A stretch of DNA of 64,000 bases, taken from positions 124,001 through 188,000 of IMG/VR virus record IMGVR_UViG_3300035182_002586; one strand, given 5' to 3'. The translations under genes were made by a program, and so were the position numbers. The notes beneath the pieces are model-generated. The model was not told where the DNA came from. It made no database searches and saw nothing but the letters and a program-made list of their open reading frames with translations. How positions within the stretch are numbered: the first letter of the stretch is position 1; each line of letters begins with the position of its first letter. Positions 926-58,902 of this stretch are shown piece by piece.

Positions 926-1222
926 CTATCGCCCTACGCTGACCAGGGCGTCGTCGATCTGGTCCGGGTCCAAGCGGAAAGGACCCGGACCCCCTGCCCC
1001 GGGAGCCCAACCGGCCAGGACCCCTCGCCGGACCAGGGCCTCCACCTCGGTCGTTCCGATGGCGTCACATCGACGTACATCCACCGTGGCCACGAGGCAG
1101 CGCCCCGGGAACGCCTCCACCTCGATCGTCACGTTGAGACAGGGGGCCGCCCTCTTGGTGACCAGGAAGCGGTAGGAGGTGGTGTCGACGGTCAACCGCC
1201 GGCTGTGGTTAGGCAGGGTCAT
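926..1222 (-). CDS. hypothetical protein
   Basis: ORF preceded by GGTGTA motif 11 nt upstream. Confidence 0.55.
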   Translation of the reverse strand: MTLPNHSRRLTVDTTSYRFLVTKRAAPCLNVTIEVEAFPGRCLVATVDVRRCDAIGTTEVEALVRRGVLAGWAPGAGGPGPFRLDPDQIDDALVSVGR

Positions 1223-1261
1223 GCCCTAGCTACTACACCTTTTATCGCCCCCGCAGGGGTG

Positions 1262-1600
1262 ATGGCCTACTCCTACGACCACCGGACCCGCACCGCTGCC
1301 TTCAACATCTCGAAGGTGGTCATGGACATCGACGTTGACCTCTACCCCGAGAAGCTCTCCTGGACCTCAAGTGGGAAGGTCCTCATGACGGGGGTGGCCG
1401 AGTTCGTTCTCCCCAACCGCAAGCACAAGAGCAAGCCCTACGAGCTGGAGACCTCCGAAGACGGTACGGTCCAGCAGTGCAAGTGCGAAGACCCTATGCA
1501 TCGACAGATGATCTGGATCGCCGCAGACAAGCGCAAGCGCGAGCTGGCCGAGCTGATCGAGGACCAGAAGCAGCGGGGCGGGCTCCGTCGCAAGCCCTGA
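1262..1600 (+). CDS. hypothetical protein
   Basis: ORF from ATG 1262 (MAYSYDHR); codon bias. Confidence 0.7.
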   Translation: MAYSYDHRTRTAAFNISKVVMDIDVDLYPEKLSWTSSGKVLMTGVAEFVLPNRKHKSKPYELETSEDGTVQQCKCEDPMHRQMIWIAADKRKRELAELIEDQKQRGGLRRKP

Positions 1601-2635
1601 TCAAACCCGGTTGATGTAGCGGCTGACGACTCTGTGGGCGATCGTGGCGTTTTTCGGGCGCGTGCTGGCCTTGCCGAGCGCCTCTATCGCCTGCTGGAAG
1701 TCGTCCGGTACCTTCCACGCGTTCTCGTTGGGGAACCCGTGACCAACCCCGTACTGGTCTAGCAGGGCCCGGACTGTCTTCACGGAACGGTCGATCTGTG
1801 CGACTGCCTCCGCTTCGACTTTGCCCTTGAAGGGGGTGTAGAAGTCTTTGAACGAGATCACCTGCTGGTGGGCGTCGCTGTACTGCTCCGCGATGTCGAA
1901 GGGGATGGCCATCCCCTCGTTCGTGTAGAGGAGCGTCATGAGCTTCGCCGACTCGGCGTACAGCTTGATGAACATCGCCGTGTAGTCGTGGGCGGCTACG
2001 TGGACCGCCTTGATCGACTCGATCGACGAGTGTGCCGAGGCCACCTCAATCGCCTTCTTGAGGCCGTTGACGCGCGCCCCGAGGCGGAGCGCCATGGACG
2101 AGAGCACCGTGCAGAACGCCTCCACCTTCTTTGCCACGGTCTTGTCTGAGGGCTTCTCACTCGTCTGTGTCACGTGTTCGGCAGTCTTGTGAAGCGTGTC
2201 CACGGAGTGCGCGAACGTGTGAGTGAGGAACTCGTGCGCGTCCAGCCTCCACGGGGGGGTGAACGTGCCCTCGACCTCTCCCATGGCCCGCTCGAAGATG
2301 CGGGTACACGCCGACATCTCCCTCTGGATGATGGCAATGTTCGCCCGCAGTTCTTCTGCCCGCTTCTTCTCCTCAGGGTCGCCGACCCTCTCGGTGCGGT
2401 CGTTCGTGCGCTTGCCCTCTAGGACTTCCTTCGCGACGTTGACCTCCACCATCTTCCGGTGGTCACCGCCACGGTCCGGGTGGTGTTCGATCGACTTCGC
2501 ACGCCACGCCTTGTTGATCTCGGTGTCGGTGGGGTTGTAGTGCGGCGGGAACCCCAAGATCTCCTTGGCGTCCTCGACGGTCAACGCAATCCGAAGCCGG
2601 TGGGCGAGAAGGGTGCGGCGGTGGAGGTCCATCAC
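1601..2635 (-). CDS. J-domain (DnaJ-like) protein
   Basis: AKEILG...EINKAWR...HHPDRGG...EVNVAKEVL, a J-domain with HPD. Confidence 0.8.
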   Translation of the reverse strand: MMDLHRRTLLAHRLRIALTVEDAKEILGFPPHYNPTDTEINKAWRAKSIEHHPDRGGDHRKMVEVNVAKEVLEGKRTNDRTERVGDPEEKKRAEELRANIAIIQREMSACTRIFERAMGEVEGTFTPPWRLDAHEFLTHTFAHSVDTLHKTAEHVTQTSEKPSDKTVAKKVEAFCTVLSSMALRLGARVNGLKKAIEVASAHSSIESIKAVHVAAHDYTAMFIKLYAESAKLMTLLYTNEGMAIPFDIAEQYSDAHQQVISFKDFYTPFKGKVEAEAVAQIDRSVKTVRALLDQYGVGHGFPNENAWKVPDDFQQAIEALGKASTRPKNATIAHRVVSRYINRV

Positions 2636-2649
2636 TACCCCGGTCGGAT

Positions 2650-2694
2650 AAGAGGAACTATTGCAGAGCCCGGAAGAGGAACTATTGCAGAGCC
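2650..2694. repeat. direct duplication of aagaggaactattgcagagcc (21 bp, 24-bp period)
   Basis: Copies at 2650-2670 and 2674-2694. Confidence 0.9.
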
Positions 2695-3002
2695 AGGCTA
2701 AGCCCCCGGCACAACCGCTTAGCCTCCCTCCCCGGACCCAAAGCGATGGCTGTCAGCTCGTCTTGCCGATCGGGTTCATAGAAGGCTGCCACCGGGAGGC
2801 CGTATTGCAGAGCGCGCTCCAGGAGGTCGTCCAGAGACGCCTCATTCTGGACGGTGAGCATCGCCAGCGTGTTCGAGGTCTCGTACCAAACCTTGTCCTT
2901 GTCCGGGTGGGTAGCCGACCATTCACGCAATGCATGGGCCGCCTGCACCGCCTGGTGTTGAGGGGGGAGATCGGCACGGGTGATGAGTCTGAGCTTGTCC
3001 AC
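2682..3002 (-). CDS. Pth2-like peptidyl-tRNA hydrolase family protein
   Basis: LITRADL...QAVQAAHA...FYEPD...LTAIALGP pattern; GTG start inferred. Confidence 0.7.
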   Translation of the reverse strand: MDKLRLITRADLPPQHQAVQAAHALREWSATHPDKDKVWYETSNTLAMLTVQNEASLDDLLERALQYGLPVAAFYEPDRQDELTAIALGPGREAKRLCRGLSLALQ

Positions 3003-5771: not shown

Positions 5772-6152
5772 ATGCCGCTGCCGCAGCTCGAATTGAAGCC
5801 CGGGTTCGACACCGCCACACGCTCGGGAAAGGGTCACGACGATCCGCTCGCGTTGCTGGAGGAGTTACACGAAGGCGTTCGGGAGGTAGGGGTAGGTGCT
5901 GTCGTCTACGTCAAAGACGAACCGAGCCGGCAGCCGCCGACGATCGGATTCGAGCTGCATCGGATCAAAGGGGACTTGGATCAGTGGTGGGAATTCTTCA
6001 TTGAGGTACCCAAGTTCAAGGCCACCAAAGAGAAGCTCCCTGCCGGGCTGTGGGGAGCCTTCCTGACCACCGGGGGACGAGCCGCGATCGCACGTCTCAT
6101 GGCCGAAGGAACGCCTCCAGGAGAGCTGGAAGCGAAGCTGTCCTCGGTGTAG
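5772..6152 (+). CDS. hypothetical protein
   Basis: ORF from ATG 5772, preceded by GGTGTA. Confidence 0.65.
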   Translation: MPLPQLELKPGFDTATRSGKGHDDPLALLEELHEGVREVGVGAVVYVKDEPSRQPPTIGFELHRIKGDLDQWWEFFIEVPKFKATKEKLPAGLWGAFLTTGGRAAIARLMAEGTPPGELEAKLSSV

Positions 6153-6162
6153 GGGCCTCACC

Positions 6163-6540
6163 ATGACCGAGTTCGCCGCAGGGGACATCGTTCGAGTCGT
6201 ATCCCAACCGCTCAACCAGAGGTTCGTCCACCTCATCAACGAGGTCGGGGTCCTGTCCGAGGTCAAGGACGGCCACGACCTCCTGGAGACCTTCGGGTCA
6301 GGGATCAACTCGTGCGGAGGTAGTGGCTGGGTGACGCTCGCGTCCCTCGTGCACGAGCACGACCCCGTGTACGTCGCGAAGAAGCAGGCGAAGGACGCAG
6401 CGCGAGAGAAGTACCTCCAAGAGGGCCGCGCGTTCAACGATCGCATCAACGGCATCGAGAAGGGGTTAGCGGAGAAGCACGGCATCCCCGTCGATGCCGT
6501 GAAGGACATCTACAACACGCTCGCCAACGCGTACCCGTAG
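6163..6540 (+). CDS. hypothetical protein
   Basis: ORF preceded by GGTGTA. Confidence 0.7.
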   Translation: MTEFAAGDIVRVVSQPLNQRFVHLINEVGVLSEVKDGHDLLETFGSGINSCGGSGWVTLASLVHEHDPVYVAKKQAKDAAREKYLQEGRAFNDRINGIEKGLAEKHGIPVDAVKDIYNTLANAYP

Positions 6541-6559
6541 CTCGGTGTAGTCGGAGGGT

Positions 6560-7474
6560 ATGAAGCCCTTCGACTTCCCGCTAGCAGACCTGCACCGACA
6601 CCTGGACGGATCGCTCCGGCCGGAGACGATCCTGGAGCTGGCGGAAGCACAGGGCTACCCGCCGCCGAGCCTCGACAAGCTCCGGTTCCAGCCTCGTATG
6701 GGGCTGGAAGACGCGCTCAACCGCTTCGGTTACATCCTGTGTCTCCTCCAGCACCCGGGGGACGTGCGCCGTGTCGCGTCGGAAATCTGTGAGGACGCCG
6801 CCGCCGACGGAGTGACGACCCTGGAGATCCGGTTCGCTCCGCAGCTCCACGGTGGGGCGCCGATCGAAGAGATCGTAGAGGCGGTTGTCGAGGGGGTGGC
6901 CGGGCGCGCCGGGGTCATCCTCTGCGCCCTCCATGGGGACCCTCCGGAAGTCGCGAAGAAGCTCGTCGAGGTCGCCATCCCGAGGAAAGGCGTCGTAGGC
7001 ATCGACCTCGCAGGGTGCTCTACGCCTCATCATAGCTTCACGATGAAGGACTACGTGACCGCCTTCCGGCGCGCTGAGGAGCACGGGATCGGGCGAACGG
7101 TGCACGCGAGTGAGGGTGGGCCCGCAACCGAGGTCCGGGACGCCATCGAGCTGCTCCACGCCCAACGGATCGGCCACGGGACCATGATGTCCTACGACAT
7201 GAGCGTCGTGGAGCTGGCCCGTGAGCGTGGGGTCGTCTTCGAGGTCTGCCTCACGTCGAACGTCCACACGGGCGTCATCTCCGAGCTGGTCTACCACCCG
7301 GTCAACGCCTGGCTCGCGTGTGGGATCCGCGCCGTCATCTGCCCGGACAACACGTTCTTCTCGAACGTCTCCTCGTCGCAGGAGCACCTGAACGCGCTCT
7401 CCATCCCCGCCATCAGCGAGGACACCTTGCGTACGATGGTCACGTGGGGGCACGAAGCCGCGTTCCGACGTTAG
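6560..7474 (+). CDS. add: adenosine deaminase family protein
   Basis: DLHRHLDGS, EIRFAP, VHASEG, RIGHG, EVCLTSN and PDN motifs. Confidence 0.9.
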   Translation: MKPFDFPLADLHRHLDGSLRPETILELAEAQGYPPPSLDKLRFQPRMGLEDALNRFGYILCLLQHPGDVRRVASEICEDAAADGVTTLEIRFAPQLHGGAPIEEIVEAVVEGVAGRAGVILCALHGDPPEVAKKLVEVAIPRKGVVGIDLAGCSTPHHSFTMKDYVTAFRRAEEHGIGRTVHASEGGPATEVRDAIELLHAQRIGHGTMMSYDMSVVELARERGVVFEVCLTSNVHTGVISELVYHPVNAWLACGIRAVICPDNTFFSNVSSSQEHLNALSIPAISEDTLRTMVTWGHEAAFRR

Positions 7475-7845: not shown

Positions 7846-8114
7846 CCCCAGGTCAGCTCGGTGCGCCGGGCCTTCTTGAGGTCCTGGCAGATGGCCGAGA
7901 GTTCGTCGAGGTACTGGAGGTCGTCCGCAGCGAGAGTCCCCTTCGCCTTCTCGACCCCGGCGATGGCTTCCTTGAGCGGCATCTTACCCGCCGTTTCCTC
8001 ACACGGAGGAAGCCCCATGGCTTGGAGGATGCGCCCCGCCAGACCGTTGTTGAGGTCGAGCGAGCGCGGGTACTTCATCCCACGCTTTTTGATGCCCGTG
8101 AAGCTGACCGACAT
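7842..8114 (-). CDS. hypothetical protein
   Basis: ORF preceded by GGTGTA on the minus strand. Confidence 0.65.
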   Translation of the reverse strand: MSVSFTGIKKRGMKYPRSLDLNNGLAGRILQAMGLPPCEETAGKMPLKEAIAGVEKAKGTLAADDLQYLDELSAICQDLKKARRTELTWG

Positions 8115-8124
8115 ACGTTCTTCC

Positions 8125-8139
8125 TACACCGCCGGTGTA
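8125..8139. promoter_or_regulatory. back-to-back divergent GGTGTA promoter motifs (tacacc-gcc-ggtgta)
   Basis: Inverted pair 10 and 9 nt from the divergent start codons at 8114 and 8149. Confidence 0.65.
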
Positions 8140-8148
8140 CATGAAGAC

Positions 8149-8724
8149 ATGACGGAACCGACGGACACCCGCACGCTCGCCGAACGCCATGCCTCCTGTG
8201 AGGATGAAGAGCGGTACTGGGGCGAGCCGATGACTCGGGAGCAGATCATCGAGGGCGCACGTCTAAACGAGGCTGCTGGCGACGAAGTGACTTCGGAGCT
8301 GGTCACGTGGCTCCTCACGCATCGCAAGAGGCTCATGGCCATCGTCACGGCGGCCACGAAGTTCGTGTACGTCGGGGACTACTTCAAGAACGGAAGCCAC
8401 AACAACTCCACGGCCCCCTTCGTCGGCGCCGAGCGGGAACTCACGCAGGCCGTCGGTCCGGCTCGTCTGGTGGGGCCGTGGGATCCGAAGGCAACCAGCG
8501 GGCTCACGTTCGACGTCAAACTCGCGCTGGAGAACTACGAGCTGCGCAAGACTCAGAACAAGGGAAAGCAGGTCGACAACTCTCGGCTCCCGGCAGGGTC
8601 CCCCATGCACTACTACTGCCGGTTCTGCGGGGAGCCGACCGAGACGCTGCCCGAGGGGCACATCGTCAAGCCGTCCACGTGCTGTGACCCCTGCCAGCTC
8701 CTCCACAACCACGGGGTCATCTAG
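8149..8724 (+). CDS. hypothetical protein with C-terminal zinc ribbon
   Basis: CRFC...CDPC; ATG 8149. Confidence 0.7.
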   Translation: MTEPTDTRTLAERHASCEDEERYWGEPMTREQIIEGARLNEAAGDEVTSELVTWLLTHRKRLMAIVTAATKFVYVGDYFKNGSHNNSTAPFVGAERELTQAVGPARLVGPWDPKATSGLTFDVKLALENYELRKTQNKGKQVDNSRLPAGSPMHYYCRFCGEPTETLPEGHIVKPSTCCDPCQLLHNHGVI

Positions 8725-9555: not shown

Positions 9556-11298
9556 TCACATCATCGTCGGGGCCGCCACGCCGATGACATCGAGGCCGGC
9601 TGCGAGCGTGACCTGAACCGCCTCGGTGAGGGCGAGTCGGGCGTTGAGCTGGCGCGGGTTGGTGCAGAGGATCCGCTTCTCCGCGTCGTCGTTTCCGGCC
9701 GCGTACCAACGGGCGAACGTCGACGCGACGAGGAGGAGCTGGCGCACGACGAGGGACACGTCGTACTCGTGCTGGATGATGGCGCGGGACATCGCCTCGG
9801 GGAACCCGGCGATAGCGTGGACGACGGCCTTCTCCTCAGCAGTACAGAGAGCCGTGGCGTCGTAGTCGGTGGTGCGTCCACCCTTTCGGAGGATGTTGCA
9901 CGCACGTGCGTGCGCGTACTGGACGTAGGGGCCCGTATCCCCCTCGAAGTCGAGGATGCGGTCCCAGTCAAACTCGTAGTCGGTCTCGCGACGGTTGCGC
10001 AGGTCGTTGAAGATGATGGCGCCGATGCCGACCGCCCGGGCGACCTCATCGAGGTCCCGCAGCTTCGCGATCTTGTCGGGGGTACGCTCCAGCGCCTTCT
10101 CCCGGGCACGGGCCACGGCCTCGTCGAGCACGTGTTCGAGAAGGATGGTCCGCCCGTACCGGGTGCTCATCCCATGGACGCGGCCGAAGCCGACATGATC
10201 GCAGTCCCCGACCCACGGCTTGCCCATCCGGAGGAGCGTGCCGAAGACCTGTGCGAAGTGGTGGTACTGGTCGAGAGCGACGACGTACAGGGAGCGGTCG
10301 AACTTGAACCGGTCGTACCGGTCGATCGCAGCCGCGATGTCCCGCGTCACGTAGAGCGAGGACCCATCCGTCTTCCGGAGCACGATCGGGGGGTTCGAGT
10401 GGATGTCTGCGATGAGAGCGCCCTGAGACTCCTTGACCCCCACGGTCCGAGCGATCTCGTCGATGGTCGCAGAGGTACGAGTCCTGTCGTACCTGCTCTC
10501 ACCCTCGTAGTGGTCGAAGCTGATCCCGAGCCTCGCGTAGACCCGCTTGAAGCTCTCGATGGAACGGTCGCGGATCGACCGCCAGAGGGCGAGGGCTCCC
10601 TCGTCTCCGTTCTCCATCCGAACGAAGAAGGCCCGTGCTCGGGGGAGGATGCTTCGTTCGTCGTCGTTCACCTCGGCAGCGCGCGCCGCCTTCACGTACG
10701 CCTCGACGAGCATCTCCACGCTGGCGTCACGGGCATCGAGTCCCGGCGTCAGCTCGACGCCCACGGCGACCATGCCGAACTGCGTCCCCCAATCTCCGAG
10801 GTAGTTGATCCCTTCGACCTTCCACCCGTGTGCTCGATGGAGGCGTGCGAGGGCGTTCCCGAGGACCGTGGAACGGATGTGGTGATAGGCGATGGGCTTC
10901 GCGATGTTGGGCGAGGAGTAGTCGATCACGACGGTCTTCCCCTCCCCCGTCGAGGTGGTCCCGTAGGCCGGGCCCTCCACCGTCGCCGCGTCGATGACCC
11001 CCCGTGCGAACGAGGGGAAGTCGAACCAGGCGTTGACGTACGCTCCCATCGCCTCGAACACCAGCCCGTCCGCCTTGGCCTCCGCCGCGAGCTTGGTCGC
11101 GATGAGGTTGGGGGCCGTCTGGCGGGACTTCGCGAGGTGGAAGGTCGGGAACGAGATGTCCCCCTTGTCACGCACGAGCTGCCCTGCCTCGGGCATGCAG
11201 ACGTACTTGGAGACCTCTTCCGGGGGCTCCCCGAGAGCGGTGGCGATGGCGGCGGTGAACGCAGCCCGGCATCGTTCGAGGGGCGTCTTCTTGGTCAT
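9556..11298 (-). CDS. argS: arginine--tRNA ligase
   Basis: DYSSPNIAKPIAYHHIRS (HIGH variant), NYLGDWGTQFG, GMSTRYG, GDTGPYVQYAHAR. Confidence 0.95.
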   Translation of the reverse strand: MTKKTPLERCRAAFTAAIATALGEPPEEVSKYVCMPEAGQLVRDKGDISFPTFHLAKSRQTAPNLIATKLAAEAKADGLVFEAMGAYVNAWFDFPSFARGVIDAATVEGPAYGTTSTGEGKTVVIDYSSPNIAKPIAYHHIRSTVLGNALARLHRAHGWKVEGINYLGDWGTQFGMVAVGVELTPGLDARDASVEMLVEAYVKAARAAEVNDDERSILPRARAFFVRMENGDEGALALWRSIRDRSIESFKRVYARLGISFDHYEGESRYDRTRTSATIDEIARTVGVKESQGALIADIHSNPPIVLRKTDGSSLYVTRDIAAAIDRYDRFKFDRSLYVVALDQYHHFAQVFGTLLRMGKPWVGDCDHVGFGRVHGMSTRYGRTILLEHVLDEAVARAREKALERTPDKIAKLRDLDEVARAVGIGAIIFNDLRNRRETDYEFDWDRILDFEGDTGPYVQYAHARACNILRKGGRTTDYDATALCTAEEKAVVHAIAGFPEAMSRAIIQHEYDVSLVVRQLLLVASTFARWYAAGNDDAEKRILCTNPRQLNARLALTEAVQVTLAAGLDVIGVAAPTMM

Positions 11299-11638
11299 GC
11301 TCCTAGATACACCGGGTGAAGATTTCGGATGGATCGGTCCCGGCGCCCCGTTGTAGATGGACCAACAAGGCTCTGGTGCGGTAGACCGGTGACCCGGATG
11401 CAGCACTAGAAACCCGGCGCCCCCACCCGAGGGTTATGAGAGCCGGACTGAGCAATCATCGGGAGCCGCTCGTCTACCCCAAACGCCACACCAACGTGTG
11501 CCAAGGGAGGAACGGGACCGGGAAGAAGGGCCGAAAAACGGCGTTCTGACGGGCGGTAAACACCATGAGCCCCACGGCGACTGTGAGGTCGACAGAGGCA
11601 GGTAGGGGGTCATCCTTACCTGCCTCGCGCGTTTCTCG

Positions 11639-15924: not shown

Positions 15925-15974
15925 CTGAGTTTCTCGTCAACTTTGATCTACTTGTGGTGTACGTGGTAGGTAAC

Positions 15975-16055
15975 GCCGGGGTCGCTCAGTGGTAGAGCAG
16001 CAGTTTTGTAAACTGCCGTGGAGACACATCGCGGGTTCGATCCCCGCCCTCGGCT
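15975..16055 (+). tRNA. tRNA-Thr(TGT) with long variable arm
   Basis: tttgtaa loop; gtg-gaga-cac variable hairpin. Confidence 0.85.
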
Positions 16056-36389: not shown

Positions 36390-36409
36390 CCCCCGGTGTA
36401 GAAGGGGGC

Positions 36410-38593: not shown

Positions 38594-38611
38594 TCGGTGT
38601 AGGGCGCGGTC

Positions 38612-41684: not shown

Positions 41685-41975
41685 ATGGCGGCCATGAGGA
41701 AACGAGTCAGAGCGTCCGCCGACCTGGAGAAGGACGCGAAGAAGTACAAGAAGGCCCTTGAGACTCTGACAGAGCAGGTCAGGGCTGTCCTCGTACATCT
41801 GGACGAGCTGATGCAGCAGCCCTCCACGCGCGAGCGTGGGGTCAAGGTCGCCAAGCTCCTGAACAAGCTGAACATGGCGAACGACCTCGTGCGGTACAGT
41901 ACGCTCCGGATCGACTTCCAGAACGACCTTCCGATGGATCGGGACCAAGCCCTCGCTGTAGTACCCCTGCCATGA
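41685..41975 (+). CDS. hypothetical protein
   Basis: GGTGTA 11 nt upstream. Confidence 0.65.
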   Translation: MAAMRKRVRASADLEKDAKKYKKALETLTEQVRAVLVHLDELMQQPSTRERGVKVAKLLNKLNMANDLVRYSTLRIDFQNDLPMDRDQALAVVPLP

Positions 41976-42529: not shown

Positions 42530-42615
42530 GACCTCTATGTACACCGCTGAAACCCGGCACAGCGCCACGGTCTCCAAGCGGGTGCCAACCCTATGTGAGC
42601 AACGGTGTAAGATCT

Positions 42616-46401: not shown

Positions 46402-46570
46402 GGGGGTCTCCTCATGCCTTCTACAATCGTGCCAAGACGCTGATCCATCGGGCATTCCTTGTCTGAGGGTCTAATTCCAGTTCATCCCGGCGCAAGGACT
46501 CGTTCTCACTAGGTTTTTGACCGAGAGGGCCCCCCAACTTCGCGGATCCTTCTTTCAGCCGTCGAGAGGC

Positions 46571-46843: not shown

Positions 46844-46866
46844 TCCGGCTCCGGGTGTAGAAGTGC

Positions 46867-47607
46867 GTGGTGACCCACGCACGCAGGGCCTATCTCCAGA
46901 AGCGGGACGACGGCGAGTTCATCACCGAGAGCACATACGCAGCGTGGGACGGCTTCCGTCTCATGGGGCTCGAAACGATCCCCTTCGTGAGGATGGAGGA
47001 GCTGGACACCCTAGGTCTTGCCCCGGACACGATCGTCCAGGGGTGGATAGGGTCGGTTCGCTACGCCCTCTCCCGCCTCGGGGTCCCGGACCCGCATGTG
47101 CCAACCATGCCGGACGAGATCCTGCCCTTCGCGGGCCGGAGGATCTGGACGACGACCCTCGGAGAGTTCCGGGCCGGTGACCGGAAGGCGTTCATCAAAC
47201 CGCTCACGAAGCACAAGCTCTTCACGGGGCACGTGTCGAGCGGTGACCTGAACGACCTCATCCAGACTGCTAACTTCGAGGACGACGTGGTGCTCCTGGC
47301 TTCCGATCCGGTCGATTTCGTCGTCGAGTACCGGACGTTCTGGAGCCGTCGCAAGTGTGTGGGTTCCCGGTTCTACCGGGGAGACTGGCGCAAGAGCATC
47401 GACTACGAGATCGTCGAGCGGGTCGGTGCGGCGTTCACTTCGGCTCCCGTCTCGTGCTCGATCGACTTCGGGCTCACCTCCGACGGCCGGACCTTGCCTG
47501 TGGAGGTCAACGACTTCTTCGCCCTCGGAAGCTACGGCTTCTCGCATGTCCCCTACGCGCAGATGATCGAGGACCGTTGGCTGGAAATGGTCGGGGCTTC
47601 GGTGTAG
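46867..47607 (+). CDS. ATP-grasp domain protein (DUF4343-like)
   Basis: FIKP...KLFTG, EYR, IDFG.....T..VEVND. Confidence 0.8.
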   Translation: MVTHARRAYLQKRDDGEFITESTYAAWDGFRLMGLETIPFVRMEELDTLGLAPDTIVQGWIGSVRYALSRLGVPDPHVPTMPDEILPFAGRRIWTTTLGEFRAGDRKAFIKPLTKHKLFTGHVSSGDLNDLIQTANFEDDVVLLASDPVDFVVEYRTFWSRRKCVGSRFYRGDWRKSIDYEIVERVGAAFTSAPVSCSIDFGLTSDGRTLPVEVNDFFALGSYGFSHVPYAQMIEDRWLEMVGASV

Positions 47608-47615
47608 GAGGGGTT

Positions 47616-47882
47616 GTGACCGACAAGGAAAAACTGGACCGGGCCGAGGCGGCAGCCGCTCATGCAGCCATCGAGGCGTTCACGACCACCTTCGCCAAGG
47701 CTCTGGAAGTACAGGGGGTTGAGAACCCTCTGTCGCTGATGGCGGGAACCACGCACGTGCACCACAGCCTCGCTCTGGAGGCCGGGGACCACATTGTCGT
47801 GCAGTTCGTCGTGCGGTTCACCAAGGACCCGGATCTCGTCGAGAAGATCCTCGCCACCACGCGTAAAGCGGGTACTGCGTAG
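47616..47882 (+). CDS. hypothetical protein
   Basis: GGTGTA/ggagg upstream of a GTG start. Confidence 0.6.
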   Translation: MTDKEKLDRAEAAAAHAAIEAFTTTFAKALEVQGVENPLSLMAGTTHVHHSLALEAGDHIVVQFVVRFTKDPDLVEKILATTRKAGTA

Positions 47883-47910
47883 CGCCCACAGGTGTAGTAG
47901 ACGGAGCCCC

Positions 47911-48903
47911 ATGAAGCTCCGTGTTCTCCTGTGTCTGGCTCTTGTTGGGTGTTCGACTCCCTCGGCACCGGCTGCCTCCGTGGACGCCTCCGCTGGAGAG
48001 GCCGGCTTCGACGCGACTCCAGCGGACACAGGCCAAGACACTGCGAAAGCGGAGGTCGCCCCACCCCCCGAGGACTTCTCCAAGGTGTTGGGGTGGTTCG
48101 AGTCTGTCTACGGGGCGGGGGGCAACAGAGCCAAGAACGTGGAGCGAGCTGCGACCCTCCTCGACGGGACCCATATCGGTCCCGGAGAGACGTTCTCGTT
48201 CAACGCCACCGTGGGCCCGAGGACGACCGCGCGAGGGTTCTTCGTCGCCCCTGTCATCCAAGACGGTGAGATGGTTGAGGGCCTCGGTGGGGGCGTCTGC
48301 CAGGCAAGCTCGACGACCCATGCGGCTGCGTTGATGGCCGGACTCGACATCGTGGCCAGGACCCCGCACTCACGCCCTTCGGCGTATATGCCTCTCGGCC
48401 TTGATGCGACGGTGAACTTCCCACCGGAGTGTGGCGGGGATCCCAACAGCACCGCAAAGGGGTGCTACGCCCTCGATCTTCGCGTCAAGAACAGCTCAGA
48501 CAAGGCGGTGGTGATTCACACCACCACGACAGTGGACCCCAAGATCAAGTCACGAGCGACCTTGCGCGTCGAGATCCTCGGCAGCGTCGAGGTCGCCCGA
48601 CCGACGTATACGTACGGCGCTCAGACGAACGGCTCGTACGAGCGACGCTTCAAGAAGGTCGACGGCAAGCCTGAGGGGTACCACAAGCGATCGCAGAAGG
48701 GCTCGGACGGCCTCACGGTCTTCTCCACTCTCACCTCACCTGCGTCTGACGGGGGTGTGGCAGCAGTTCGACGGTACTCCTCGAAGTACCCGCCGACGGA
48801 TGAAGTGTGGGAGGTGTCGAACGACTGGCCTGAGGACACGCTCCCGTGGGAAGCGGCGCAGGACGCAGGCGTGGATGCGGCGACGGACGCCGCGCACGAC
48901 TAG
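47911..48903 (+). CDS. VanW family lipoprotein
   Basis: PGETFSFNATVGPRT, GLGGGVCQASST, HS.PSAYMPLGLDATV. Confidence 0.9.
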   Translation: MKLRVLLCLALVGCSTPSAPAASVDASAGEAGFDATPADTGQDTAKAEVAPPPEDFSKVLGWFESVYGAGGNRAKNVERAATLLDGTHIGPGETFSFNATVGPRTTARGFFVAPVIQDGEMVEGLGGGVCQASSTTHAAALMAGLDIVARTPHSRPSAYMPLGLDATVNFPPECGGDPNSTAKGCYALDLRVKNSSDKAVVIHTTTTVDPKIKSRATLRVEILGSVEVARPTYTYGAQTNGSYERRFKKVDGKPEGYHKRSQKGSDGLTVFSTLTSPASDGGVAAVRRYSSKYPPTDEVWEVSNDWPEDTLPWEAAQDAGVDAATDAAHD

Positions 48904-49184
48904 ACGACGGGCTTGAAGTCGGCCATCCAGCGCGTGATGTTCTCGCGTTGGAACTCGAACTCCGGAACCCACAGCGTCTTCCGGGCGACCTCCAAGAGCG
49001 ACGGCTCCGTGTCCGCCACGTGTTGCAGGAAGCCCCCGAAGAAGCACGCGATGAGCATTGCTGGGGGTAGGTTGAGCTTGACGTCTTCGCCGAGACACTC
49101 GCGACGCAGAAGAGCTTCGGCGAGTGCACGCCCAGCATCGGGCGGTGAAGTGTTCGTGTTGACGAACCGACTAGCTACGTGCAT
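48900..49184 (-). CDS. small STAS-like protein
   Basis: GGTGTA upstream; fold assignment tentative. Confidence 0.5.
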   Translation of the reverse strand: MHVASRFVNTNTSPPDAGRALAEALLRRECLGEDVKLNLPPAMLIACFFGGFLQHVADTEPSLLEVARKTLWVPEFEFQRENITRWMADFKPVV

Positions 49185-49244
49185 GTGTGCAGAGTACACC
49201 GCACACGCGAATCCCAATCGACTTCTTGTAAGACCCTAAGGTTG

Positions 49245-53213: not shown

Positions 53214-53269
53214 GCTGTCAGATCAGCGGCTTGCCGAAGATCTCTTCATCCTCGGTGTAGATCCAGAGC

Positions 53270-53695
53270 ATGGACGCGATGTCGTGGAGGCGCCTGGAGA
53301 AGCTGACGATCAAGCTCTGCAAGGAGGTCTTGATCGACCCTACTTCGGCCACGGTTCTCACGCTTCTGTCGGAGGCGAACGCTTGCGATTCTCGGTTCTA
53401 CCTGTGGGTGTGGCTCCTGCCCGACGGCCATGGGCGTCTCTGTCTGCGGGCCTCGACCCCCCGCCTCCCCGCCCTCAACACGACCAAGTACTGCGACCTC
53501 GTGGAGGTTGTGCGGGACGGCTGCGTGACGGTGATCAAGGATCGAGACGAGACGGGCGGGTCGAGCTTTGCCGCCCACGAGGACATCCCCCTCGTCTACG
53601 AAGAGGCCCCCACCCTGTGGGCTCGACTGGCTCTTGAGGTCGGAGTCCCGGACGACCGACGCTCTCTCGCCGACATCCTCGAACTCGCGGTGTAA
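53270..53695 (+). CDS. hypothetical protein
   Basis: GGTGTA 10 nt upstream. Confidence 0.6.
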   Translation: MDAMSWRRLEKLTIKLCKEVLIDPTSATVLTLLSEANACDSRFYLWVWLLPDGHGRLCLRASTPRLPALNTTKYCDLVEVVRDGCVTVIKDRDETGGSSFAAHEDIPLVYEEAPTLWARLALEVGVPDDRRSLADILELAV

Positions 53696-53706
53696 CGGGC
53701 AGCGGC

Positions 53707-53976
53707 ATGACGCCGCAGCAAGTTCTGGACGCTCTCGACCGATACGAAGCCAAGTGCACGCCTATTGCCGGGCAGCCTGAGAGGTTCACCTCCAAGGGCT
53801 TGCTCCCGCGGCGTCACCAGGCCGTCGCGCACGTCCTTTGGATGTGCGGGAGCATCCGCGAGCTGCTCAACGAGGGACGCATCGAGAAGTCCATGCGCTG
53901 GCTCGGGTTCGTGCAGGCCGTTCTCTGGTGCTTCGGGCTCGCCACCATCGACGAGCTGAAGGACGACAACCGCTAG
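53707..53976 (+). CDS. hypothetical phage protein
   Basis: HVLWMC...KSMRWLGFVQAVLW...TIDELKDDN. Confidence 0.7.
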   Translation: MTPQQVLDALDRYEAKCTPIAGQPERFTSKGLLPRRHQAVAHVLWMCGSIRELLNEGRIEKSMRWLGFVQAVLWCFGLATIDELKDDNR

Positions 53977-54705: not shown

Positions 54706-54722
54706 TTGGTGTACGGGAGGGC

Positions 54723-55016
54723 ATGGCCAAGCAAGTTCTCCTGTGCTCCACGATCGGCGAAGCGGGTGACGAAGTGGAGCGTGCTCTCGTAGTCGCGAGG
54801 AACGAGAAGCGTGGGGTGACGATCACCTGCCTCCCCGATGCCACTTCCGAGAGCTGGCTCGTCGAGATCGACCGCTACCGCTCGTGGGACAACGTGTCGA
54901 AGGCCGTGAAGAAGGCGATCGCCACCTTCGAGAAGGTCTCGTTCCGCACGATCCGTCTGATGGTGGCGGAGATGGAGGCGGTGAAGCAGGCCCTCACCGA
55001 GTTCGAGCGCGACTAG
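54723..55016 (+). CDS. hypothetical protein
   Basis: GGTGTA 9 nt upstream. Confidence 0.65.
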   Translation: MAKQVLLCSTIGEAGDEVERALVVARNEKRGVTITCLPDATSESWLVEIDRYRSWDNVSKAVKKAIATFEKVSFRTIRLMVAEMEAVKQALTEFERD

Positions 55017-55477: not shown

Positions 55478-55729
55478 TCAGGAGAGAGGTTTCGAGTTGG
55501 TGAGGAGCTGCACGGAGAACTCCGGCCCGAGAACGGCCCGCAGCTTGATGGCGTTTGCCTCCGAGGCGAGGACCTCGATGCTGACGGGCGTGCCGGAGCA
55601 CTGCACCCTCGGGCCCCGGGGGCGAACTACGATTCCGGGTACGTCGGCGATCGTTCGGGGCCAGCTCGGCTTCACGCTGTGTCTTGCGTCCCTGTGGACG
55701 CCCACGAGCCACTCGCGGATGGTACTCAT
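55478..55729 (-). CDS. hypothetical protein
   Basis: GGTGTA 11 nt upstream. Confidence 0.6.
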   Translation of the reverse strand: MSTIREWLVGVHRDARHSVKPSWPRTIADVPGIVVRPRGPRVQCSGTPVSIEVLASEANAIKLRAVLGPEFSVQLLTNSKPLS

Positions 55730-56310
55730 ACCCTTGCTTCTACACCATGCGTGATCGCATCCGAGCCGTGCTACTCGACATCCTTCGGGAGCGGCACCCC
55801 ATCGGCATCCCCGAGAGCGCCCTCATCAGGCTTTGCCCCAAATTAGCGGCCGGGGCCCGCAATCTGAGGCGGCCGTCGGCATTCAGGATCGTGCCAGCGC
55901 CGCAGCGCGGCGGACGTAGATCGTCCGGAATCGGCTACGTCGAGCAGTTGCCAACCGGGATGGGAAAGCCGATGTCGAGCACGGTCTCGTGGACCACGAC
56001 TTCTCTATCGTTCGACAGGTGCGGTAGGAGCTGTAGGTGCAGCCCTTCGAGGTGGCGGCCGGCGCGTGCCGTGAGTTGGGCGTGTATCTCCCCGGCATGA
56101 TCTCGCACGAAGACCTCGACGCTCTGCGCAAGGTCGAGCAGCCGGTCGGCGCGAGACACCACCCGACTTGAGACGCCAGCCGTCGACGACCCACCCCCGG
56201 CGAGAAGTAGACCGTTCCGTCATCCGCGTAGAATGGGAGCACCAGGCGCGTTCAAGCGTTGTAGGTCCATGTGAGTCACGACGGGAGTTTCGCCAGCCCC
56301 GTTCAGCAGT

Positions 56311-56664: not shown

Positions 56665-56754
56665 CGTCTCGCGCCTCCCACGTCGAGGGCATCGCTCTGA
56701 ACGCAGCGCGCGGCAACGGACTTCCGGTGTACCGCGACTTCGGAGGTGATCGAG

Positions 56755-56970
56755 ATGGAGTTCGCGAAGGGCGAGACGGTGACGTTGAAGTCGGGCGGGC
56801 CGACGATGACGGTGAGCGATCCGAAGATGGAGATCGGCGGGCTCGTCGAGGTGGTCTGGTTCTCGAAGGCGGGCTTTCTTCGACGGGAGACGTTCGACGA
56901 GGCGCTGCTCGCCGCAGTCCTCCCGCGCCCGGTACCGGAAGACAAGGCCGCCGTGGCGCGCAAGCTCTGA
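56755..56970 (+). CDS. YodC/DUF2158-like protein
   Basis: F.KGETVTLKSGGPTMTV...VWF. Confidence 0.8.
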   Translation: MEFAKGETVTLKSGGPTMTVSDPKMEIGGLVEVVWFSKAGFLRRETFDEALLAAVLPRPVPEDKAAVARKL

Positions 56971-56981
56971 CGAATCGAGCC

Positions 56982-57281
56982 TCACTCGTCCCCTGCGAGC
57001 CGGATGGGTTCACCGTCGGGCCCACGGCCGCAGTGGGGGCACGTGCCCGGCGAAGGGAACCGCCCCGAAGTCACGTCCTCGACCGTCACGGCCCCGAGTC
57101 GGGCGATCTTGAACGCCAACATCGGCGTCACCGTCCGGCCGTTCGCCACGTTCGTGAGCGACCTCTCTTTCATCCGCAGCACCTTCGAGAGGGTCTTCCA
57201 CGTGCCGAGCCGGTGCCGCAGGAAGGCCAGCGCCGCACGCACGTGCTTCTGCTCTTCCGGCGTGAGGTCGAAGTTGATCAC
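56982..57281 (-). CDS. HTH transcriptional regulator with C-terminal CPHC
   Basis: LTPEEQKHVRAALAFLR...WKTLSKVL; coupled to the transposase stop. Confidence 0.7.
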   Translation of the reverse strand: MINFDLTPEEQKHVRAALAFLRHRLGTWKTLSKVLRMKERSLTNVANGRTVTPMLAFKIARLGAVTVEDVTSGRFPSPGTCPHCGRGPDGEPIRLAGDE

Positions 57282-58537
57282 GAGAGACCCCCATTCGACG
57301 CCATCGGGAAGTGCGGCTCGAAGTTCATCTTGTACATCGCGTGCACGAGCTGGATGACGTTGTGCACAACGGCCGCTGCGAGCGCCTCGTTCACCTGCGC
57401 GTCTGCCGACCTTGAACGGAGCGTGTCGGTCACGACGCGCTTGAACGAGCTGAATGTCGCCTCGACGTTTTGCCGCTTGCCGTACTTCGACAGGAAGGCC
57501 GGGCGGTTGAACTGGAAGTAGTGGTACGCCTGCCGGTAGCTCTCCGGCGCGTCCGCGCCGTAGCCACGACCAATCGGGAACGGGACCAAGGGCTCGGCGC
57601 CGAGGTCCACGACGCACTGGATGTTCTCGTGCGACGCGTACGCCGCGTCAGCCGAGATGCGCGCGGGCTTGAAGCCGTTCTTGACGGTCTGCTCAACGAG
57701 GGGCTTGAACTCGGGCGCATCGCCGCTGCTCCCGTGCTTCACGACGACCGACGTGATCACGTGGCTCGTCGTGTCCACGATGGCGTGGAGCTTCACCCAC
57801 CCGTGTTGCTTCGGCACCGGCACGCCGTACTTCTCGTTCCGATAGCCCGGCGCGTAGGTCCGGAGCGAGATCCCCGTCGAGTCCACGGCGAAGTCCGTCT
57901 GTCCGCCGAGTCCCACGAGCGGCATCGCGGCCCGCTGCACGAGTGAGACGAGGATCGGCGTGAGCGCCGGGTTCTCCATGTACCGGAACACGCTGTTGTA
58001 CGACGGTACCTTGTCGAGCAGGCCCTTCGACCCGAGGTCGCGCATCTCGCTCATCGAGCGACGCCCGCTCCAGCCGATGTAAACCTTCGCCATCGCCGAC
58101 ATGAGCACGTCGGCAATCGGGAGCGGCTTCCGGCCGGGCCCCGGCTTGCGCGGAAGCTCGGGTACGGTCGAGACCAGCTCACGGAGAAGAGCAACGACCT
58201 TCTCTTTCTCGTTGACCTGCGCGGCGTTGTAGCTCGTCCAGTCCTGCGTGTAGGTGACGCGCAGGCGATCCGCCATCGGCGTGCCATCGGGCGTGATCTG
58301 CGCGCGCACGATCTCGACGGCGACGATGTGCTTGCACGGCATGACCACGCCGCGCTCCGCGAAGTCCGGGCACGTGCACGTCCACGCGCCCTTCTCGTCG
58401 CGCGAGACGAGGTACCGCCCACCGTGCGTCTGCGACGGCACGAGGAAGTTCCCGCCGATGGACGAGACGCGCTTCGTCTTCGCAAGCAGAGCACCACGAA
58501 CCCGGCGAGCCTCGATCTCCGTGTTCAGGTCGATCAT
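57278..58537 (-). mobile_element. DDE transposase (IS4/IS5-like) with N-terminal SWIM zinc finger
   Basis: CTCPD...CKH; AVDSTG, WVKLH, ADAAY, Y.KRQNVEATFS..KR. Confidence 0.88.
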
Positions 58538-58602
58538 GTTTGGTATATTACCAACGAGGTACATACCTGTCAAGGTCACCCCGCGCGGTGTATTATCAGA
58601 GC

Positions 58603-58902
58603 ATGACGCTCGTGAAGATCACCGATTGGGGCTACATCTGCTTGCGGTGTGGGCATCGGTGGGTGCCACGCGGGCTCGTCCTTCCGCCGTTGCCGGAGCA
58701 CCGGAAGTCGGACGTGCAGACGCGGAAGCGCCCCACGGACCCCGAGGACCCCGGCCCGAAGCCGAAGGAACCTGTCGAGGAGCCGCGTGTGTGCCCGAAC
58801 TGCAAGTCGCCGTACTGGAACAAGCCGCGAGCGCAGGACGCCGCAGACGAGGGCGTGGCTTCCGTCGAGGCTCCGAAAGGCAAGCCCCGGCGGAAGCGCT
58901 AG
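58603..58902 (+). CDS. zinc-ribbon protein divergent from the transposase
   Basis: CLRCGHRWVPR...PRVCPNCKSPYWN. Confidence 0.75.
   Translation: MTLVKITDWGYICLRCGHRWVPRGLVLPPLPEHRKSDVQTRKRPTDPEDPGPKPKEPVEEPRVCPNCKSPYWNKPRAQDAADEGVASVEAPKGKPRRKR

What the first reader, a model, noticed from the sequence alone, without database searches (positions are those of the whole stretch)
1222..58603. GGTGTA lies 9-11 nt before many start codons: a leaderless-mRNA promoter signature
Motif position and gap to start codon: 6146 (11), 6544 (10), 8134 (9), 28875 (10), 31314 (9), 36395 (9), 38596 (10), 41668 (11), 47601 (9), 53254 (10), 54708 (9) and 58587 (10). On the minus strand: 1239 (11), 8130 (10), 11313 (9), 49200 (10) and 55746 (11). 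It also occurs upstream of the Ro-like leader (26764) and the RNA array (32544). If TA is -12/-11, transcription starts at about the start codon, and several of these genes have no SD. The motif differs from the classical TGnTAnnnT. It may be a phage-specific or host-lineage promoter.
Basis: partly seen in the sequence, partly recalled or inferred. Interest (0 to 1): 0.6.

Follow-up and report, generated by a model that had tools for sequence, protein, structure and literature searches.

The report
Start-adjacent GGTGTA promoter of huge phages
In this 529-kb phage and at least 15 related huge phages, the exact hexamer GGTGTA sits about 10 bases before roughly a fifth of the start codons and behaves like a non-canonical promoter element producing mRNAs with no leader; this is a new sequence variant of a known way of expressing genes.

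Summary
All 17 listed sites are there with the stated gaps. GGTGTA occurs 48 times in the window against 12.8 expected. Genome-wide, 132 of 332 copies have an ATG 9-12 nt downstream against a 4% base rate, and no other hexamer comes close.

No RNA data exist, so the function is inferred. The indirect tests all point to a promoter for leaderless mRNA:
- Start codons next to the motif carry Shine-Dalgarno (SD) sequences only at the random rate (18% vs 17%). Genes with the motif 15 nt or more upstream carry one in 61% of cases, often starting where the ATG would otherwise be.
- The motif also lies 5-16 nt before tRNA genes.
- Divergent gene pairs have back-to-back copies.
- A second, bipartite class (GATGGATC-N16-17-GTAG-N8-ATG) has -35/-10 geometry relative to the ATG.
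- Orthologous genes in relatives share only GGTGTA and its distance to the start.

It is not a TANNNT or TGn-extended -10 element. A divergent sigma-like protein (393 aa) occurs in the same phages as the motif, and 46 sampled bacterial genomes show no comparable enrichment. This favours phage-specific recognition but does not prove it.

Verdict: new variant of a known kind.

The parts
6146..6165 (+). Class-1 site: GGTGTA 6146-6151, 11-nt gap, ATG 6163 (125 aa)
6544..6562 (+). Class-1 site: GGTGTA 6544-6549, gap 10, ATG 6560 (304 aa); follows the stop codon of the upstream gene
8112..8151 (.). Back-to-back pair between divergent genes: CAT(8112-8114)-N10-TACACC(8125-8130)-N3-GGTGTA(8134-8139)-N9-ATG(8149). 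Only 34 nt lie between the two start codons
   Evidence: 18 such divergent pairs genome-wide against 0 convergent
1220..1239 (-). Class-1 site: motif 1234-1239, gap 11, ATG ending at 1222 (98 aa; weak ORF)
11296..11313 (-). Class-1 site before the arginyl-tRNA synthetase gene (580 aa): motif 11308-11313, gap 9
28875..28893 (+). Class-1 site: gap 10, ATG 28891 (106 aa)
30221..30243 (+).
31314..31331 (+). Class-1 site: gap 9, ATG 31329 (191 aa)
36395..36412 (+). Class-1 site: gap 9, ATG 36410 (284 aa)
38596..38614 (+). Class-1 site: gap 10, ATG 38612 (113 aa). The ortholog in relative G004 also has GGTGTA at the same distance, with no other upstream similarity
41668..41687 (+). Class-1 site: gap 11, ATG 41685 (96 aa)
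42527..42545 (-).
42604..42636 (+). Short-leader variant: GGTGTA, then 13 nt, then GGAGG, then 6 nt, then ATG 42634 (gap 24). The SD begins where the ATG sits in leaderless sites
46854..46872 (+).
47601..47618 (+). Class-1 site: gap 9, GTG 47616 (88 aa)
47891..47913 (+).
49182..49200 (-). Class-1 site: gap 10, ATG (94 aa)
53254..53272 (+). Class-1 site: gap 10, ATG 53270 (141 aa)
53689..53709 (+).
54708..54725 (+). Class-1 site: gap 9, ATG 54723 (97 aa)
55727..55746 (-). Class-1 site: gap 11, ATG (83 aa)
56726..56748 (+).
58587..58605 (+). Class-1 site: gap 10, ATG 58603 (99 aa; weak coding score)
15956..15975 (+). GGTGTA 13 nt before the mature 5' end of tRNA-Thr (15975): the motif before an untranslated gene
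26448..26469 (+). GGTGTA 15 nt before tRNA-Ser (26469)
26764..26857 (+). GGTGTA 85 nt before the ATG (26855) of the 672-aa VWA-domain (Ro-like) gene: a possible long-leader case with no clear SD
32544..32549 (+). GGTGTA at the head of a gene-free stretch that holds tRNA-like arms and a sub-threshold YrlA (Y RNA-like) match at 32732-32786
23196..23235 (+). Class-2 (bipartite) site: GATGGATC, then 17 nt, then GTA, then 9 nt, then ATG 23233
41933..41975 (+). Class-2 site: GATGGATC, then 16 nt, then GTAG..., then ATG
46400..46449 (-). Class-2 site before the 303-aa gene on the minus strand. CATG sits at the usual place and is followed by AGGAG-N6-ATG

Best explanation
(C/T)GGTGTA(C/G) is a promoter element in the -10 position that needs no -35 partner. 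RNA polymerase starts about 10-12 nt downstream of its final A.

In about 22% of the phage's genes that point is the A of the start codon. The mRNA then has no leader and no Shine-Dalgarno (SD) sequence, and is translated in the leaderless mode. In a smaller set, the transcript begins directly with an SD core followed by a spacer and the ATG.

Genes downstream in the same unit are mostly overlapping or a few bases apart (consistent with coupled translation), or carry their own SD.

The element is not read the way a housekeeping sigma reads TANNNT. The most likely reader is a phage-encoded, very divergent sigma-70-family protein of 393 aa (genome 93299-94480, outside the window) bound to host core polymerase.

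Shown: the positional, compositional and comparative patterns. Inferred: that the element acts on DNA at transcription initiation, where the start lies, and which protein reads it.
For: 1. Position. An ATG lies 9-12 nt after 132 of 332 copies (p about 1e-90). The excess over the chance number of copies is essentially all start-associated.

2. SD dichotomy. SD cores occur at 18% of motif-adjacent starts (random positions 17%), at 61% when the motif lies 15 nt or more upstream, and at 46% of other genes. Fisher p = 1.4e-6. The same trend holds in relatives G004 and G005.

3. Short leaders. In 7 of 10 short-leader cases (gap 17-30), GGAGG or AAGGAG begins 10-13 nt after the motif, exactly where the ATG lies in adjacent cases.

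4. Untranslated genes. Eleven copies lie within 60 nt upstream of tRNA genes in three genomes, against 2.5 expected. Seven of them lie at 5-16 nt against 0.55 expected, p = 1.9e-6.

5. Divergent genes. There are 18 TACACC-N1-10-GGTGTA pairs against 0 convergent and 1 tandem. Only about 35 nt separate the two start codons, which leaves no other room for promoters.

6. Sister class. 72 sites have the form GATGGATC-N16-17-(T/G)GTAG-N8-CATG. With A of ATG as +1, the blocks fall at -35..-28 and -12..-7. In G004 the equivalent class ends either in CATG or, at the same distance, in CAAGGAG...ATG.

7. Start context. ATG is used at 89% of class-1 and 100% of class-2 starts, against 75% of SD-led and 63% of the remaining genes. 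C at -1 is 68% and 93% against about 50%, and A at -1 is 3% and 0%.

8. Conservation. GGTGTA-N9-12-ATG is enriched over its reversed control in 16 of 20 related records checked, by more than 4-fold in 14 of them (G056 and G057 only about 2.4-fold), for example 95 vs 11, 84 vs 3 and 141 vs 8. These phages have GC from 0.48 to 0.62. Motif status is conserved between orthologs (odds ratio 9.5, p = 1e-4; odds ratio 25.6, p = 2e-8), while the rest of the upstream DNA does not align.

9. No canonical alternatives. Sigma-70 consensus promoters are not enriched (2 found, 2.4 expected). No multisubunit polymerase is encoded.

10. Candidate reader. The 393-aa protein shows region-2 and region-4-like blocks conserved across 5 orthologs and weak ECF-sigma profile hits. 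In the fold search, 19 of the top 22 matches among 48,161 chains are sigma domain 2. Homologs occur in 13 related records. Eleven of them are clearly motif-enriched and two (G056, G057) only about 2.4-fold. The complete genome G001 lacks both the protein and the motif and uses SD instead.
Against: No transcription start has been mapped, because no RNA run holds the sequence.

The hexamer lacks the T at -7 and the TGn spacing of known sigma-70 -10 elements.

In the sister class the shared GTA lies 8 nt from the ATG, not 10-11. One fixed distance to the start therefore cannot hold for both classes.

Many sites sit about 20-25 nt behind the stop codon of a co-directional gene, which is also where a cistron-internal translation signal would be.

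C at -1 is common at all starts in this genome (about 50%), so that argument is weak.

Gene starts come from my own codon-usage caller.

The link to the sigma-like protein is correlative and confounded with relatedness. Fold-search Z scores (6.8 or less) are below what is safe for helical bundles. Pfam region 2 finds nothing. Three motif-rich records show no homolog, though all three are incomplete.
Confidence: 0.72

Rival explanations
1. GGUGUA acts on the RNA as a translation-initiation signal. It would be an unusual ribosome-binding or start-associated sequence read by the ribosome or a phage protein inside polycistronic mRNAs.
For: The distance to start codons is fixed and the motif is on the coding strand. 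Many copies lie in short gaps between co-directional genes. There is an ATG bias like that of the start-associated sequences of Cluster K mycobacteriophages. GGUG could pair with the CACC of the 16S tail (my own knowledge).
Against: - The motif also lies 5-16 nt before tRNA genes.
- When it lies further upstream, the gene has its own canonical SD at normal spacing.
- GGTGAT, the true complement of the 16S tail, is not enriched.
- The spacing of 11-14 nt from GGUG to the ATG is too long for SD pairing.
- The sister class is bipartite with a 16-17-nt spacer, as promoters are.
- Back-to-back pairs leave no room for separate promoters.
- There is no selected hairpin that would present the motif.
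Confidence: 0.1
2. The motif is a promoter as described, but it is read by a sigma factor of the host lineage rather than by a phage protein.
For: No complete sigma is recognisable by Pfam in the phage. The host is unknown, so its promoters could not be examined. GTGTAC resembles the GGGTA(C/T) -10 element of SigB/SigF-type sigmas (recalled from memory, not tested).
Against: - 5 diverse bacterial genomes and 41 Planctomycetota genomes show at most 2-3-fold excess over control and 30 or fewer sites per Mb. The phage has about 250 per Mb.
- The exact hexamer is kept in phages with GC from 0.48 to 0.64, which probably infect different hosts.
- The complete relative G001 lacks the motif and also lacks the sigma-like gene.
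Confidence: 0.2
3. GGUGUA guides an endoribonuclease that cuts polycistronic RNA just before the AUG, so that leaderless mRNAs arise by processing.
For: It would explain the fixed distance, the C|A junction and the sites inside operons. MazF-type generation of leaderless mRNA is a precedent (my own knowledge).
Against: The bipartite sister class and the back-to-back pairs are DNA-like architectures. The motif before tRNA genes is better explained by a promoter, since RNase P makes mature tRNA 5' ends. No candidate nuclease was looked for.
Confidence: 0.05
4. GGTGTA is the binding site of a phage repressor or activator (an operator or 'stoperator'), not the polymerase recognition element itself.
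For: Pairs of copies form inverted repeats (TACACC-N3-6-GGTGTA), like operators. The phage has conserved proteins made only of sigma region-4-like helix-turn-helix domains.
Against: Most copies (about 105 of 141) are single half-sites. The inverted pairs occur only between divergent genes, and their spacers vary from 1 to 10 nt. The distance to the start codon, not to a partner site, is what is conserved. No other promoter-like element is found near these starts.
Confidence: 0.06

Closest known systems
-10 motif TANNNT next to ORFs in Deinococcus-Thermus and Actinobacteria (Zheng 2011, PMC3160421; de Groot 2014, PMC4007540; Cortes 2013, PMC3898074; Life Sci Alliance 2025, PMC12340547)
   Same: A short promoter element lies at a fixed small distance before start codons. 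Those genes lack SD, and other genes in the same genome use GGAG-type SD. Two motif classes (a -10-like one and an RBS-like one) appear when upstream regions are analysed.
   Different: The sequence is GGTGTA, with no T four bases after TA and with TG abutting TA. It is a feature of a phage clade rather than of a bacterial phylum, and it is conserved letter for letter across phages of GC 0.48-0.64.
Middle and late genes of Thermus phage phiYS40 (Sevostyanova et al. 2007, cited in PMC12340547; details recalled from memory because the paper is not held)
   Same: A large myovirus whose later promoters have a -10 element but no -35, and whose mRNAs are largely leaderless.
   Different: phiYS40 uses the host's canonical -10 consensus. 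Here the hexamer is non-canonical and a phage sigma-like protein is the suspected reader. Nothing is known here about timing.
T4 late promoters (TATAAATA read by gp55 with gp33 and the clamp)
   Same: A -10-only element read by a minimal, highly divergent phage sigma. T4 gp55 is among the fold matches of the 393-aa protein (7d7d_F, Z 6.2).
   Different: The sequence is different. T4 late mRNAs have leaders with SD. No gp33 or clamp dependence can be inferred here.
Start-associated sequences of Cluster K mycobacteriophages (PMC3203893)
   Same: A phage-clade-specific repeat lies just before start codons. It is biased to ATG, conserved across subclusters and absent from the host genome.
   Different: The start-associated sequence is 13 bp (GGGATAGGAGCCC), lies 3-7 bp from the start, contains the SD core and was proposed to act in translation. 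GGTGTA is 6-8 bp, lies 9-12 bp away, excludes SD and also precedes tRNA genes.
Extended -10 promoters (TGnTATAAT)
   Same: A -10-region element that works without a -35 element thanks to extra upstream bases.
   Different: TG is one base closer to TA, and the downstream half of the hexamer (AAT) is absent.

Membership tests
Leaderless-type sigma-70 -10 element (TANNNT next to the ORF) | The element lies so close to the ORF that the transcription start falls on the start codon | tested here: met
   The gap from the final A to the ATG is 9-12 nt in 132 of 332 copies, with a mode of 10-11. In G004 the mode is 9 and in G005 it is 10
Leaderless-type sigma-70 -10 element (TANNNT next to the ORF) | Consensus T-A-N-N-N-T with a conserved last T | tested here: not met
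   T at that position is 13-16%, below background. The first base after TA is C or G in 85% of cases
Leaderless-type sigma-70 -10 element (TANNNT next to the ORF) | Genes with the element lack SD while other genes have it | tested here: met
   18% against 61% and 46%, with random positions at 17%. Fisher p = 1.4e-6
Leaderless-type sigma-70 -10 element (TANNNT next to the ORF) | Mapped primary 5' end at the start codon | not testable with these tools
   No RNA run holds the window. Only 6 DNA metagenome runs do
Extended -10 promoter | TG separated by one base from the TA of the hexamer | tested here: not met
   The motif is invariably TGTA. One-base variants are not enriched
Shine-Dalgarno ribosome-binding site | Complementarity to the 16S tail at 5-10 nt from the start | tested here: not met
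   GGTGAT and GGAGG-type words are not enriched at this distance. GGTG ends 11-14 nt from the ATG. Separate GGAGG cores appear when a leader exists
Two-block sigma-70-family promoter (applies to class 2) | Two conserved blocks 16-18 nt apart, placed at about -35 and -10 relative to the start | tested here: met
   The GATGGATC-to-GTA spacer is 17 nt in 48 sites and 16 nt in 19 of 72. GTA to ATG is 8 nt in 47 sites. Whether the start is the A of ATG is inferred
Sigma-70 family protein (the 393-aa candidate) | Region 2 domain recognisable by profile | tested here: not met
   Pfam Sigma70_r2 gives no hit in the genome. NCBIfam ECF models score only 15-20 bits, far below their cut-offs
Sigma-70 family protein (the 393-aa candidate) | Sigma domain-2 fold | tested here: inconclusive
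   The model has mean pLDDT 59.5, with core helices at 70-88. Foldseek finds nothing significant. In VIA-align the top matches are almost all sigma domain 2, but Z is 6.8 or less
Start-associated sequences (Cluster K) | 13-bp GGGATAGGAGCCC lying 3-7 bp before the start and containing AGGAG | tested here: not met
   The word, the distance and the SD content all differ

The most novel reading that the evidence does not exclude
A clade of 350-530-kb phages carries its own very divergent sigma factor, whose domain 2 is split by an insertion of about 110 residues. This factor would retarget host RNA polymerase to a -10-only GGTGTA element.

With it, the phages express about a fifth of their genes as leaderless mRNAs, or as mRNAs that begin directly with the SD. 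This would hold whatever the host's GC content or own promoter code.

The sigma gene itself sits behind the bipartite GATGGATC class, and a third motif (TTCTCTTATC) precedes structural genes. Together this would make a three-step transcription cascade.
Probability: 0.35. Interest if true: 0.75.

Novelty: new variant of a known kind. Interest (0 to 1): 0.62.

Why it matters
Huge phages known only from metagenomes have essentially no described gene-expression signals.

A letter-perfect promoter word shared by at least 15 such genomes has three practical uses:
- It fixes start codons.
- It delimits transcription units.
- It helps recognise members of the clade.

It would also add a new -10 specificity, and probably a new sigma subfamily, to the known repertoire. 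It would show that a mostly leaderless or minimal-leader transcriptome can be a viral strategy rather than only a trait of certain bacterial phyla.

The candidate sigma and its 6-8-bp target form a compact, testable pair for in vitro transcription.

Tried and rejected
- RNA evidence.
- Hairpin idea. Several sites look as if the motif sits in a hairpin loop. However, folding energies of real sites equal those of shuffled flanks, of non-start copies and of left/right chimeras, for both classes. No column covariation was found either. A few sites do have very strong hairpins (-21 to -22 kcal/mol).
- 'No SD in this genome'. This was my first reading, from word enrichment before all ATGs, and it was wrong. 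With gene calls, SD cores are clearly used by non-motif genes.
- C at -1 as a start-site mark. The effect is real but weak, because C is common before all starts.
- Host identification.
  - A megablast of an 8-kb stretch of the window against known phages found only one tRNA.
  - The transposase gave no bacterial relatives.
  - The ArgRS relatives are 38% identical or less and mostly Verrucomicrobiota or other PVC bacteria.
- Structural-region loci of 51 relatives showed no motif, but neither does that region in this phage.
- The double region-4 protein (71524-72171) as the reader of the motif. It is conserved in G004 and G005, but also in motif-free G001, so there is no correlation.
- Polymerase searches. 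No RNAP beta domain and no DFDGD motif were found.
- Literature searches for the word or for leaderless huge phages found nothing relevant.
- The phiYS40 paper is not held.

Full report
**Context**

The window is bases 124001-188000 of a 528,957-bp IMG/VR virus record. The record is labelled provirus and 100% complete by CheckV, with GC about 0.64.

The window holds 53 tRNA genes and a tmRNA. It also holds genes for an arginyl-tRNA synthetase, a VWA-domain (Ro-like) protein, a D-Ala-D-Ala ligase, a VanW protein and a DDE transposase. A baseplate-J protein elsewhere in the genome marks it as a tailed phage. Known phages share only one tRNA with the 8-kb stretch of the window that was searched.

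**Observation**

GGTGTA occurs 48 times in the window, against 12.8 +/- 3.5 in shuffles. Seven further sites of the same kind are in the window.

Genome-wide there are 332 copies, against 195 of the reversed word. An ATG follows at a gap of 9, 10, 11 or 12 in 23, 49, 39 and 21 copies, where about 3 per position is the background. Among all hexamers, GGTGTA is the top scorer for 'ATG 9-12 nt downstream' (132 of 332, base rate 4.2%, p about 1e-90). Every other significant word is a shifted version of it, and one-mismatch variants are not enriched.

I called genes with a codon-usage log-odds model trained on long ORFs. 137 of 623 genes have a motif-linked start. In 87 of them that start is the one chosen from coding potential alone.

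The logo is (C/T)GGTGTA(C/G). There is no conserved block further upstream and no T four bases after TA.

**Transcription or translation?**

No RNA run holds the sequence, so I used indirect tests.

1. SD dichotomy.
   - SD cores occur before 18% of motif-adjacent starts, the same as at random positions (17%).
   - They occur before 61% of starts whose GGTGTA lies 15 nt or more upstream, and before 46% of other genes (Fisher p = 1.4e-6).
   - The phage therefore does use canonical SD, but not where the motif abuts the start.

2. Short leaders.
   - In the short-leader cases the SD core begins 10-13 nt after the motif in 7 of 10 sites. That is the same place as the ATG in adjacent sites.
   - This is what one expects if RNA starts there and the message begins either with AUG or with the SD.

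3. tRNA genes.
   - In this genome and two relatives, 11 copies lie within 60 nt upstream of tRNA genes, against 2.5 expected.
   - Seven of them lie 5-16 nt from the mature 5' end, against 0.55 expected (p = 1.9e-6).
   - Window examples are 15956 (tRNA-Thr) and 26448 (tRNA-Ser).
   - The copy at 32544 heads a gene-free stretch with tRNA-like arms and a weak YrlA match.

4. Divergent genes.
   - 18 divergent gene pairs carry TACACC-N1-10-GGTGTA, against 0 convergent and 1 tandem arrangement.
   - At 8112-8151 only 34 nt separate the two start codons.

5. Start context.
   - Start codons are ATG in 89% of motif-adjacent genes, against 75% of SD-led and 63% of the remaining genes.
   - The base before the start is C in 68% and A in 3%, against about 50% and 11-14%.
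   - This is a modest effect.

6. Canonical signals.
   - Canonical sigma-70 promoters and intrinsic terminators are not enriched in 20 kb of the window.

7. Hairpins.
   - A hairpin presenting the motif is not selected for.

**A second class**

72 sites have the form GATGGATC-N16-17-(T/G)GTAG(A/T)RGG-N-CATG. With the A of ATG as +1, the blocks occupy -35..-28 and -12..-7, which is standard two-block promoter geometry. The -10-like block shares CGnTGTA(G) with class 1.

These sites cluster at 420-525 kb before small genes. A few have longer leaders with AGGAGG.

In relative G005 the upstream block is GGTTGATCC. In G004 the class is GTATAGAA-N16-GCGTT(A/C). There, at one fixed distance, the sequence continues either CATG or CAAGGAG...ATG. 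That is strong internal evidence that the CA is the transcription start.

**Relatives**

The baseplate protein finds 51 loci in IMG/VR, many on contigs of 200-512 kb.

GGTGTA-N9-12-ATG exceeds its reversed control by more than 4-fold in 14 of the 20 related records checked. It exceeds it only about 2.4-fold in two more, G056 (28 vs 12) and G057 (32 vs 13). Examples of the clear cases:

| Record | Motif count | Reversed control |
|---|---|---|
| G004 | 95 | 11 |
| G005 | 84 | 3 |
| G054 | 141 | 8 |
| G051 (GC 0.48) | 87 | 12 |

It is not enriched in G001 or in the three most distant records. In G004 and G005 it is again the top hexamer.

Between this phage and G004 or G005, reciprocal best hits have a median identity of about 49%. 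The presence of the motif is conserved between these orthologs (odds ratios 9.5 and 25.6; p = 1e-4 and 2e-8). The upstream regions share nothing but GGTGTA and its distance to the start.

G001 is complete, has GC 0.50 and shares the Ro-like protein at 61% identity. It uses GGAGGT/GAGGTG before its genes and has no such motif.

**Who reads it?**

The phage has no RNAP beta domain, no DFDGD motif and no Pfam sigma region 2.

It has two proteins made only of sigma region-4-like domains: 479437-479790, and 71524-72171 with two copies. The second is conserved in relatives, including motif-free G001, so it does not track the motif.

A third protein of 393 aa (93299-94480) gives weak ECF-sigma hits.
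- Its alignment with four orthologs shows blocks that resemble regions 2.1-2.2, 2.3-2.4 and 4.2, with an insertion of about 110 residues.
- The predicted structure is of moderate quality.
- Foldseek finds nothing.
- An exhaustive alignment to 48,161 chains puts sigma domain 2 in 19 of the top 22 places, at Z of 6.8 or less.
- Homologs are found in 13 related records. Eleven of these are clearly motif-enriched, and G056 and G057 only about 2.4-fold.
- No homolog is found in complete, motif-free G001. None is found in three motif-rich records either, but those are incomplete.
- Its own gene lies 42 nt behind a class-2 GATGGATC block.

This evidence is suggestive and correlative only.

Five diverse bacterial genomes and 41 Planctomycetota genomes show no comparable enrichment. 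The host remains unknown.

**Comparison with what is known**

A -10-like motif next to ORFs is the accepted signature of leaderless genes in Actinobacteria and Deinococcus-Thermus (PMC3160421, PMC4007540, PMC3898074, PMC12340547). From memory, Thermus phage phiYS40 has -10-only promoters and leaderless later genes.

What differs here:
- The word itself is not TANNNT and not TGn-extended.
- It is conserved letter for letter across a clade of huge phages with different GC contents.
- There are minimal leaders that start with the SD.

The start-associated sequences of Cluster K mycobacteriophages are a phage-clade parallel, but they contain the SD and lie 3-7 bp from the start.

**Verdict**

This is a new variant of a known kind. 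What remains to be shown is the 5' end of the RNA and the identity of the protein that reads the motif.

Noticed in passing
window 23196-23235, 41933-41975, 46400-46449(-), 11328, 63708; genome-wide 72 sites, mostly 420-525 kb: There is a second start-linked element, GATGGATC-N16-17-(T/G)GTAG(A/T)RGG-N-CATG, with -35/-10-like geometry. Its upstream block differs between related phages (GGTTGATCC in G005, GTATAGAA with GCGTT in G004).
   Followed up: yes
genome 211471, 226111, 240385, 250980, 350288, 353737 (minus strand); window 926-932 and 2647-2653 (minus strand), 49964-49970 and 63799-63805 (plus strand): A third repeated word, T(T/C)TCTTATC(C/G)CC, lies 30-45 nt before large structural genes that have SD-bearing leaders. 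It may be a late promoter class.
   Followed up: partly
genome 93299-94480 (+), outside the window (L031:721-1902): A 393-aa protein has sigma region 2 and 4-like blocks and a large insertion. Fold matches are dominated by sigma domain 2 at modest Z. It occurs in the same phages as the GGTGTA motif.
   Followed up: partly
genome 479437-479790 (+) and 71524-72171 (-): Two proteins consist only of sigma-70 region-4 domains (one copy and two copies). The first has an RpoD-like recognition helix and no ortholog in G004 or G005. The second is a conserved core gene.
   Followed up: partly
window 14785-52528: The window holds 53 tRNA genes covering nearly all amino acids, plus a tmRNA at 51160-51517 (tag ANDNGTVITALKAAA). 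A predicted suppressor tRNA lies just upstream of the window, at genome 123254.
   Followed up: no
window 26855-28873 and 32560-32800: A 672-aa VWA-domain (Ro-like) gene is followed, a few kb on, by a gene-free stretch. That stretch has tRNA-like T-arms and a sub-threshold YrlA (Y RNA-like) match at 32732-32786 (26.5 bits against a cut-off of 69).
   Followed up: partly
window 57278-58537 (-); genome 501846-504236 (-): Two mobile-element genes are present: a DDE transposase with a SWIM finger in the window, and a 796-aa TnpB/Cas12f-like protein elsewhere. The latter has a class-1 GGTGTA start. No close bacterial relative of the transposase was found.
   Followed up: partly
genome 108139, 285982, 289071, 160395 (= window 36395): A handful of class-1 sites sit in the loop of very stable hairpins (down to -22 kcal/mol), and the 3' arm ends at the ATG. 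This is not a general feature. They may double as 3'-end hairpins of the upstream gene.
   Followed up: partly
genome 72193-74172 (-): A 659-aa protein appears to join a NusG-like N-terminus to a 5'-3' exonuclease-like C-terminus, next to the double region-4 gene. This was read by eye only.
   Followed up: no
window 40549-41583 (-) and 47980-48903 (+): D-Ala-D-Ala ligase and VanW-domain genes are present in a phage genome.
   Followed up: no
L096 (JBBIRK010000007.1, 216,823-bp contig binned as Zixibacteria): This is the best bacterial-database match to the phage ArgRS (38% identity, full length). The contig may itself be a related huge phage that was binned into a MAG.
   Followed up: no
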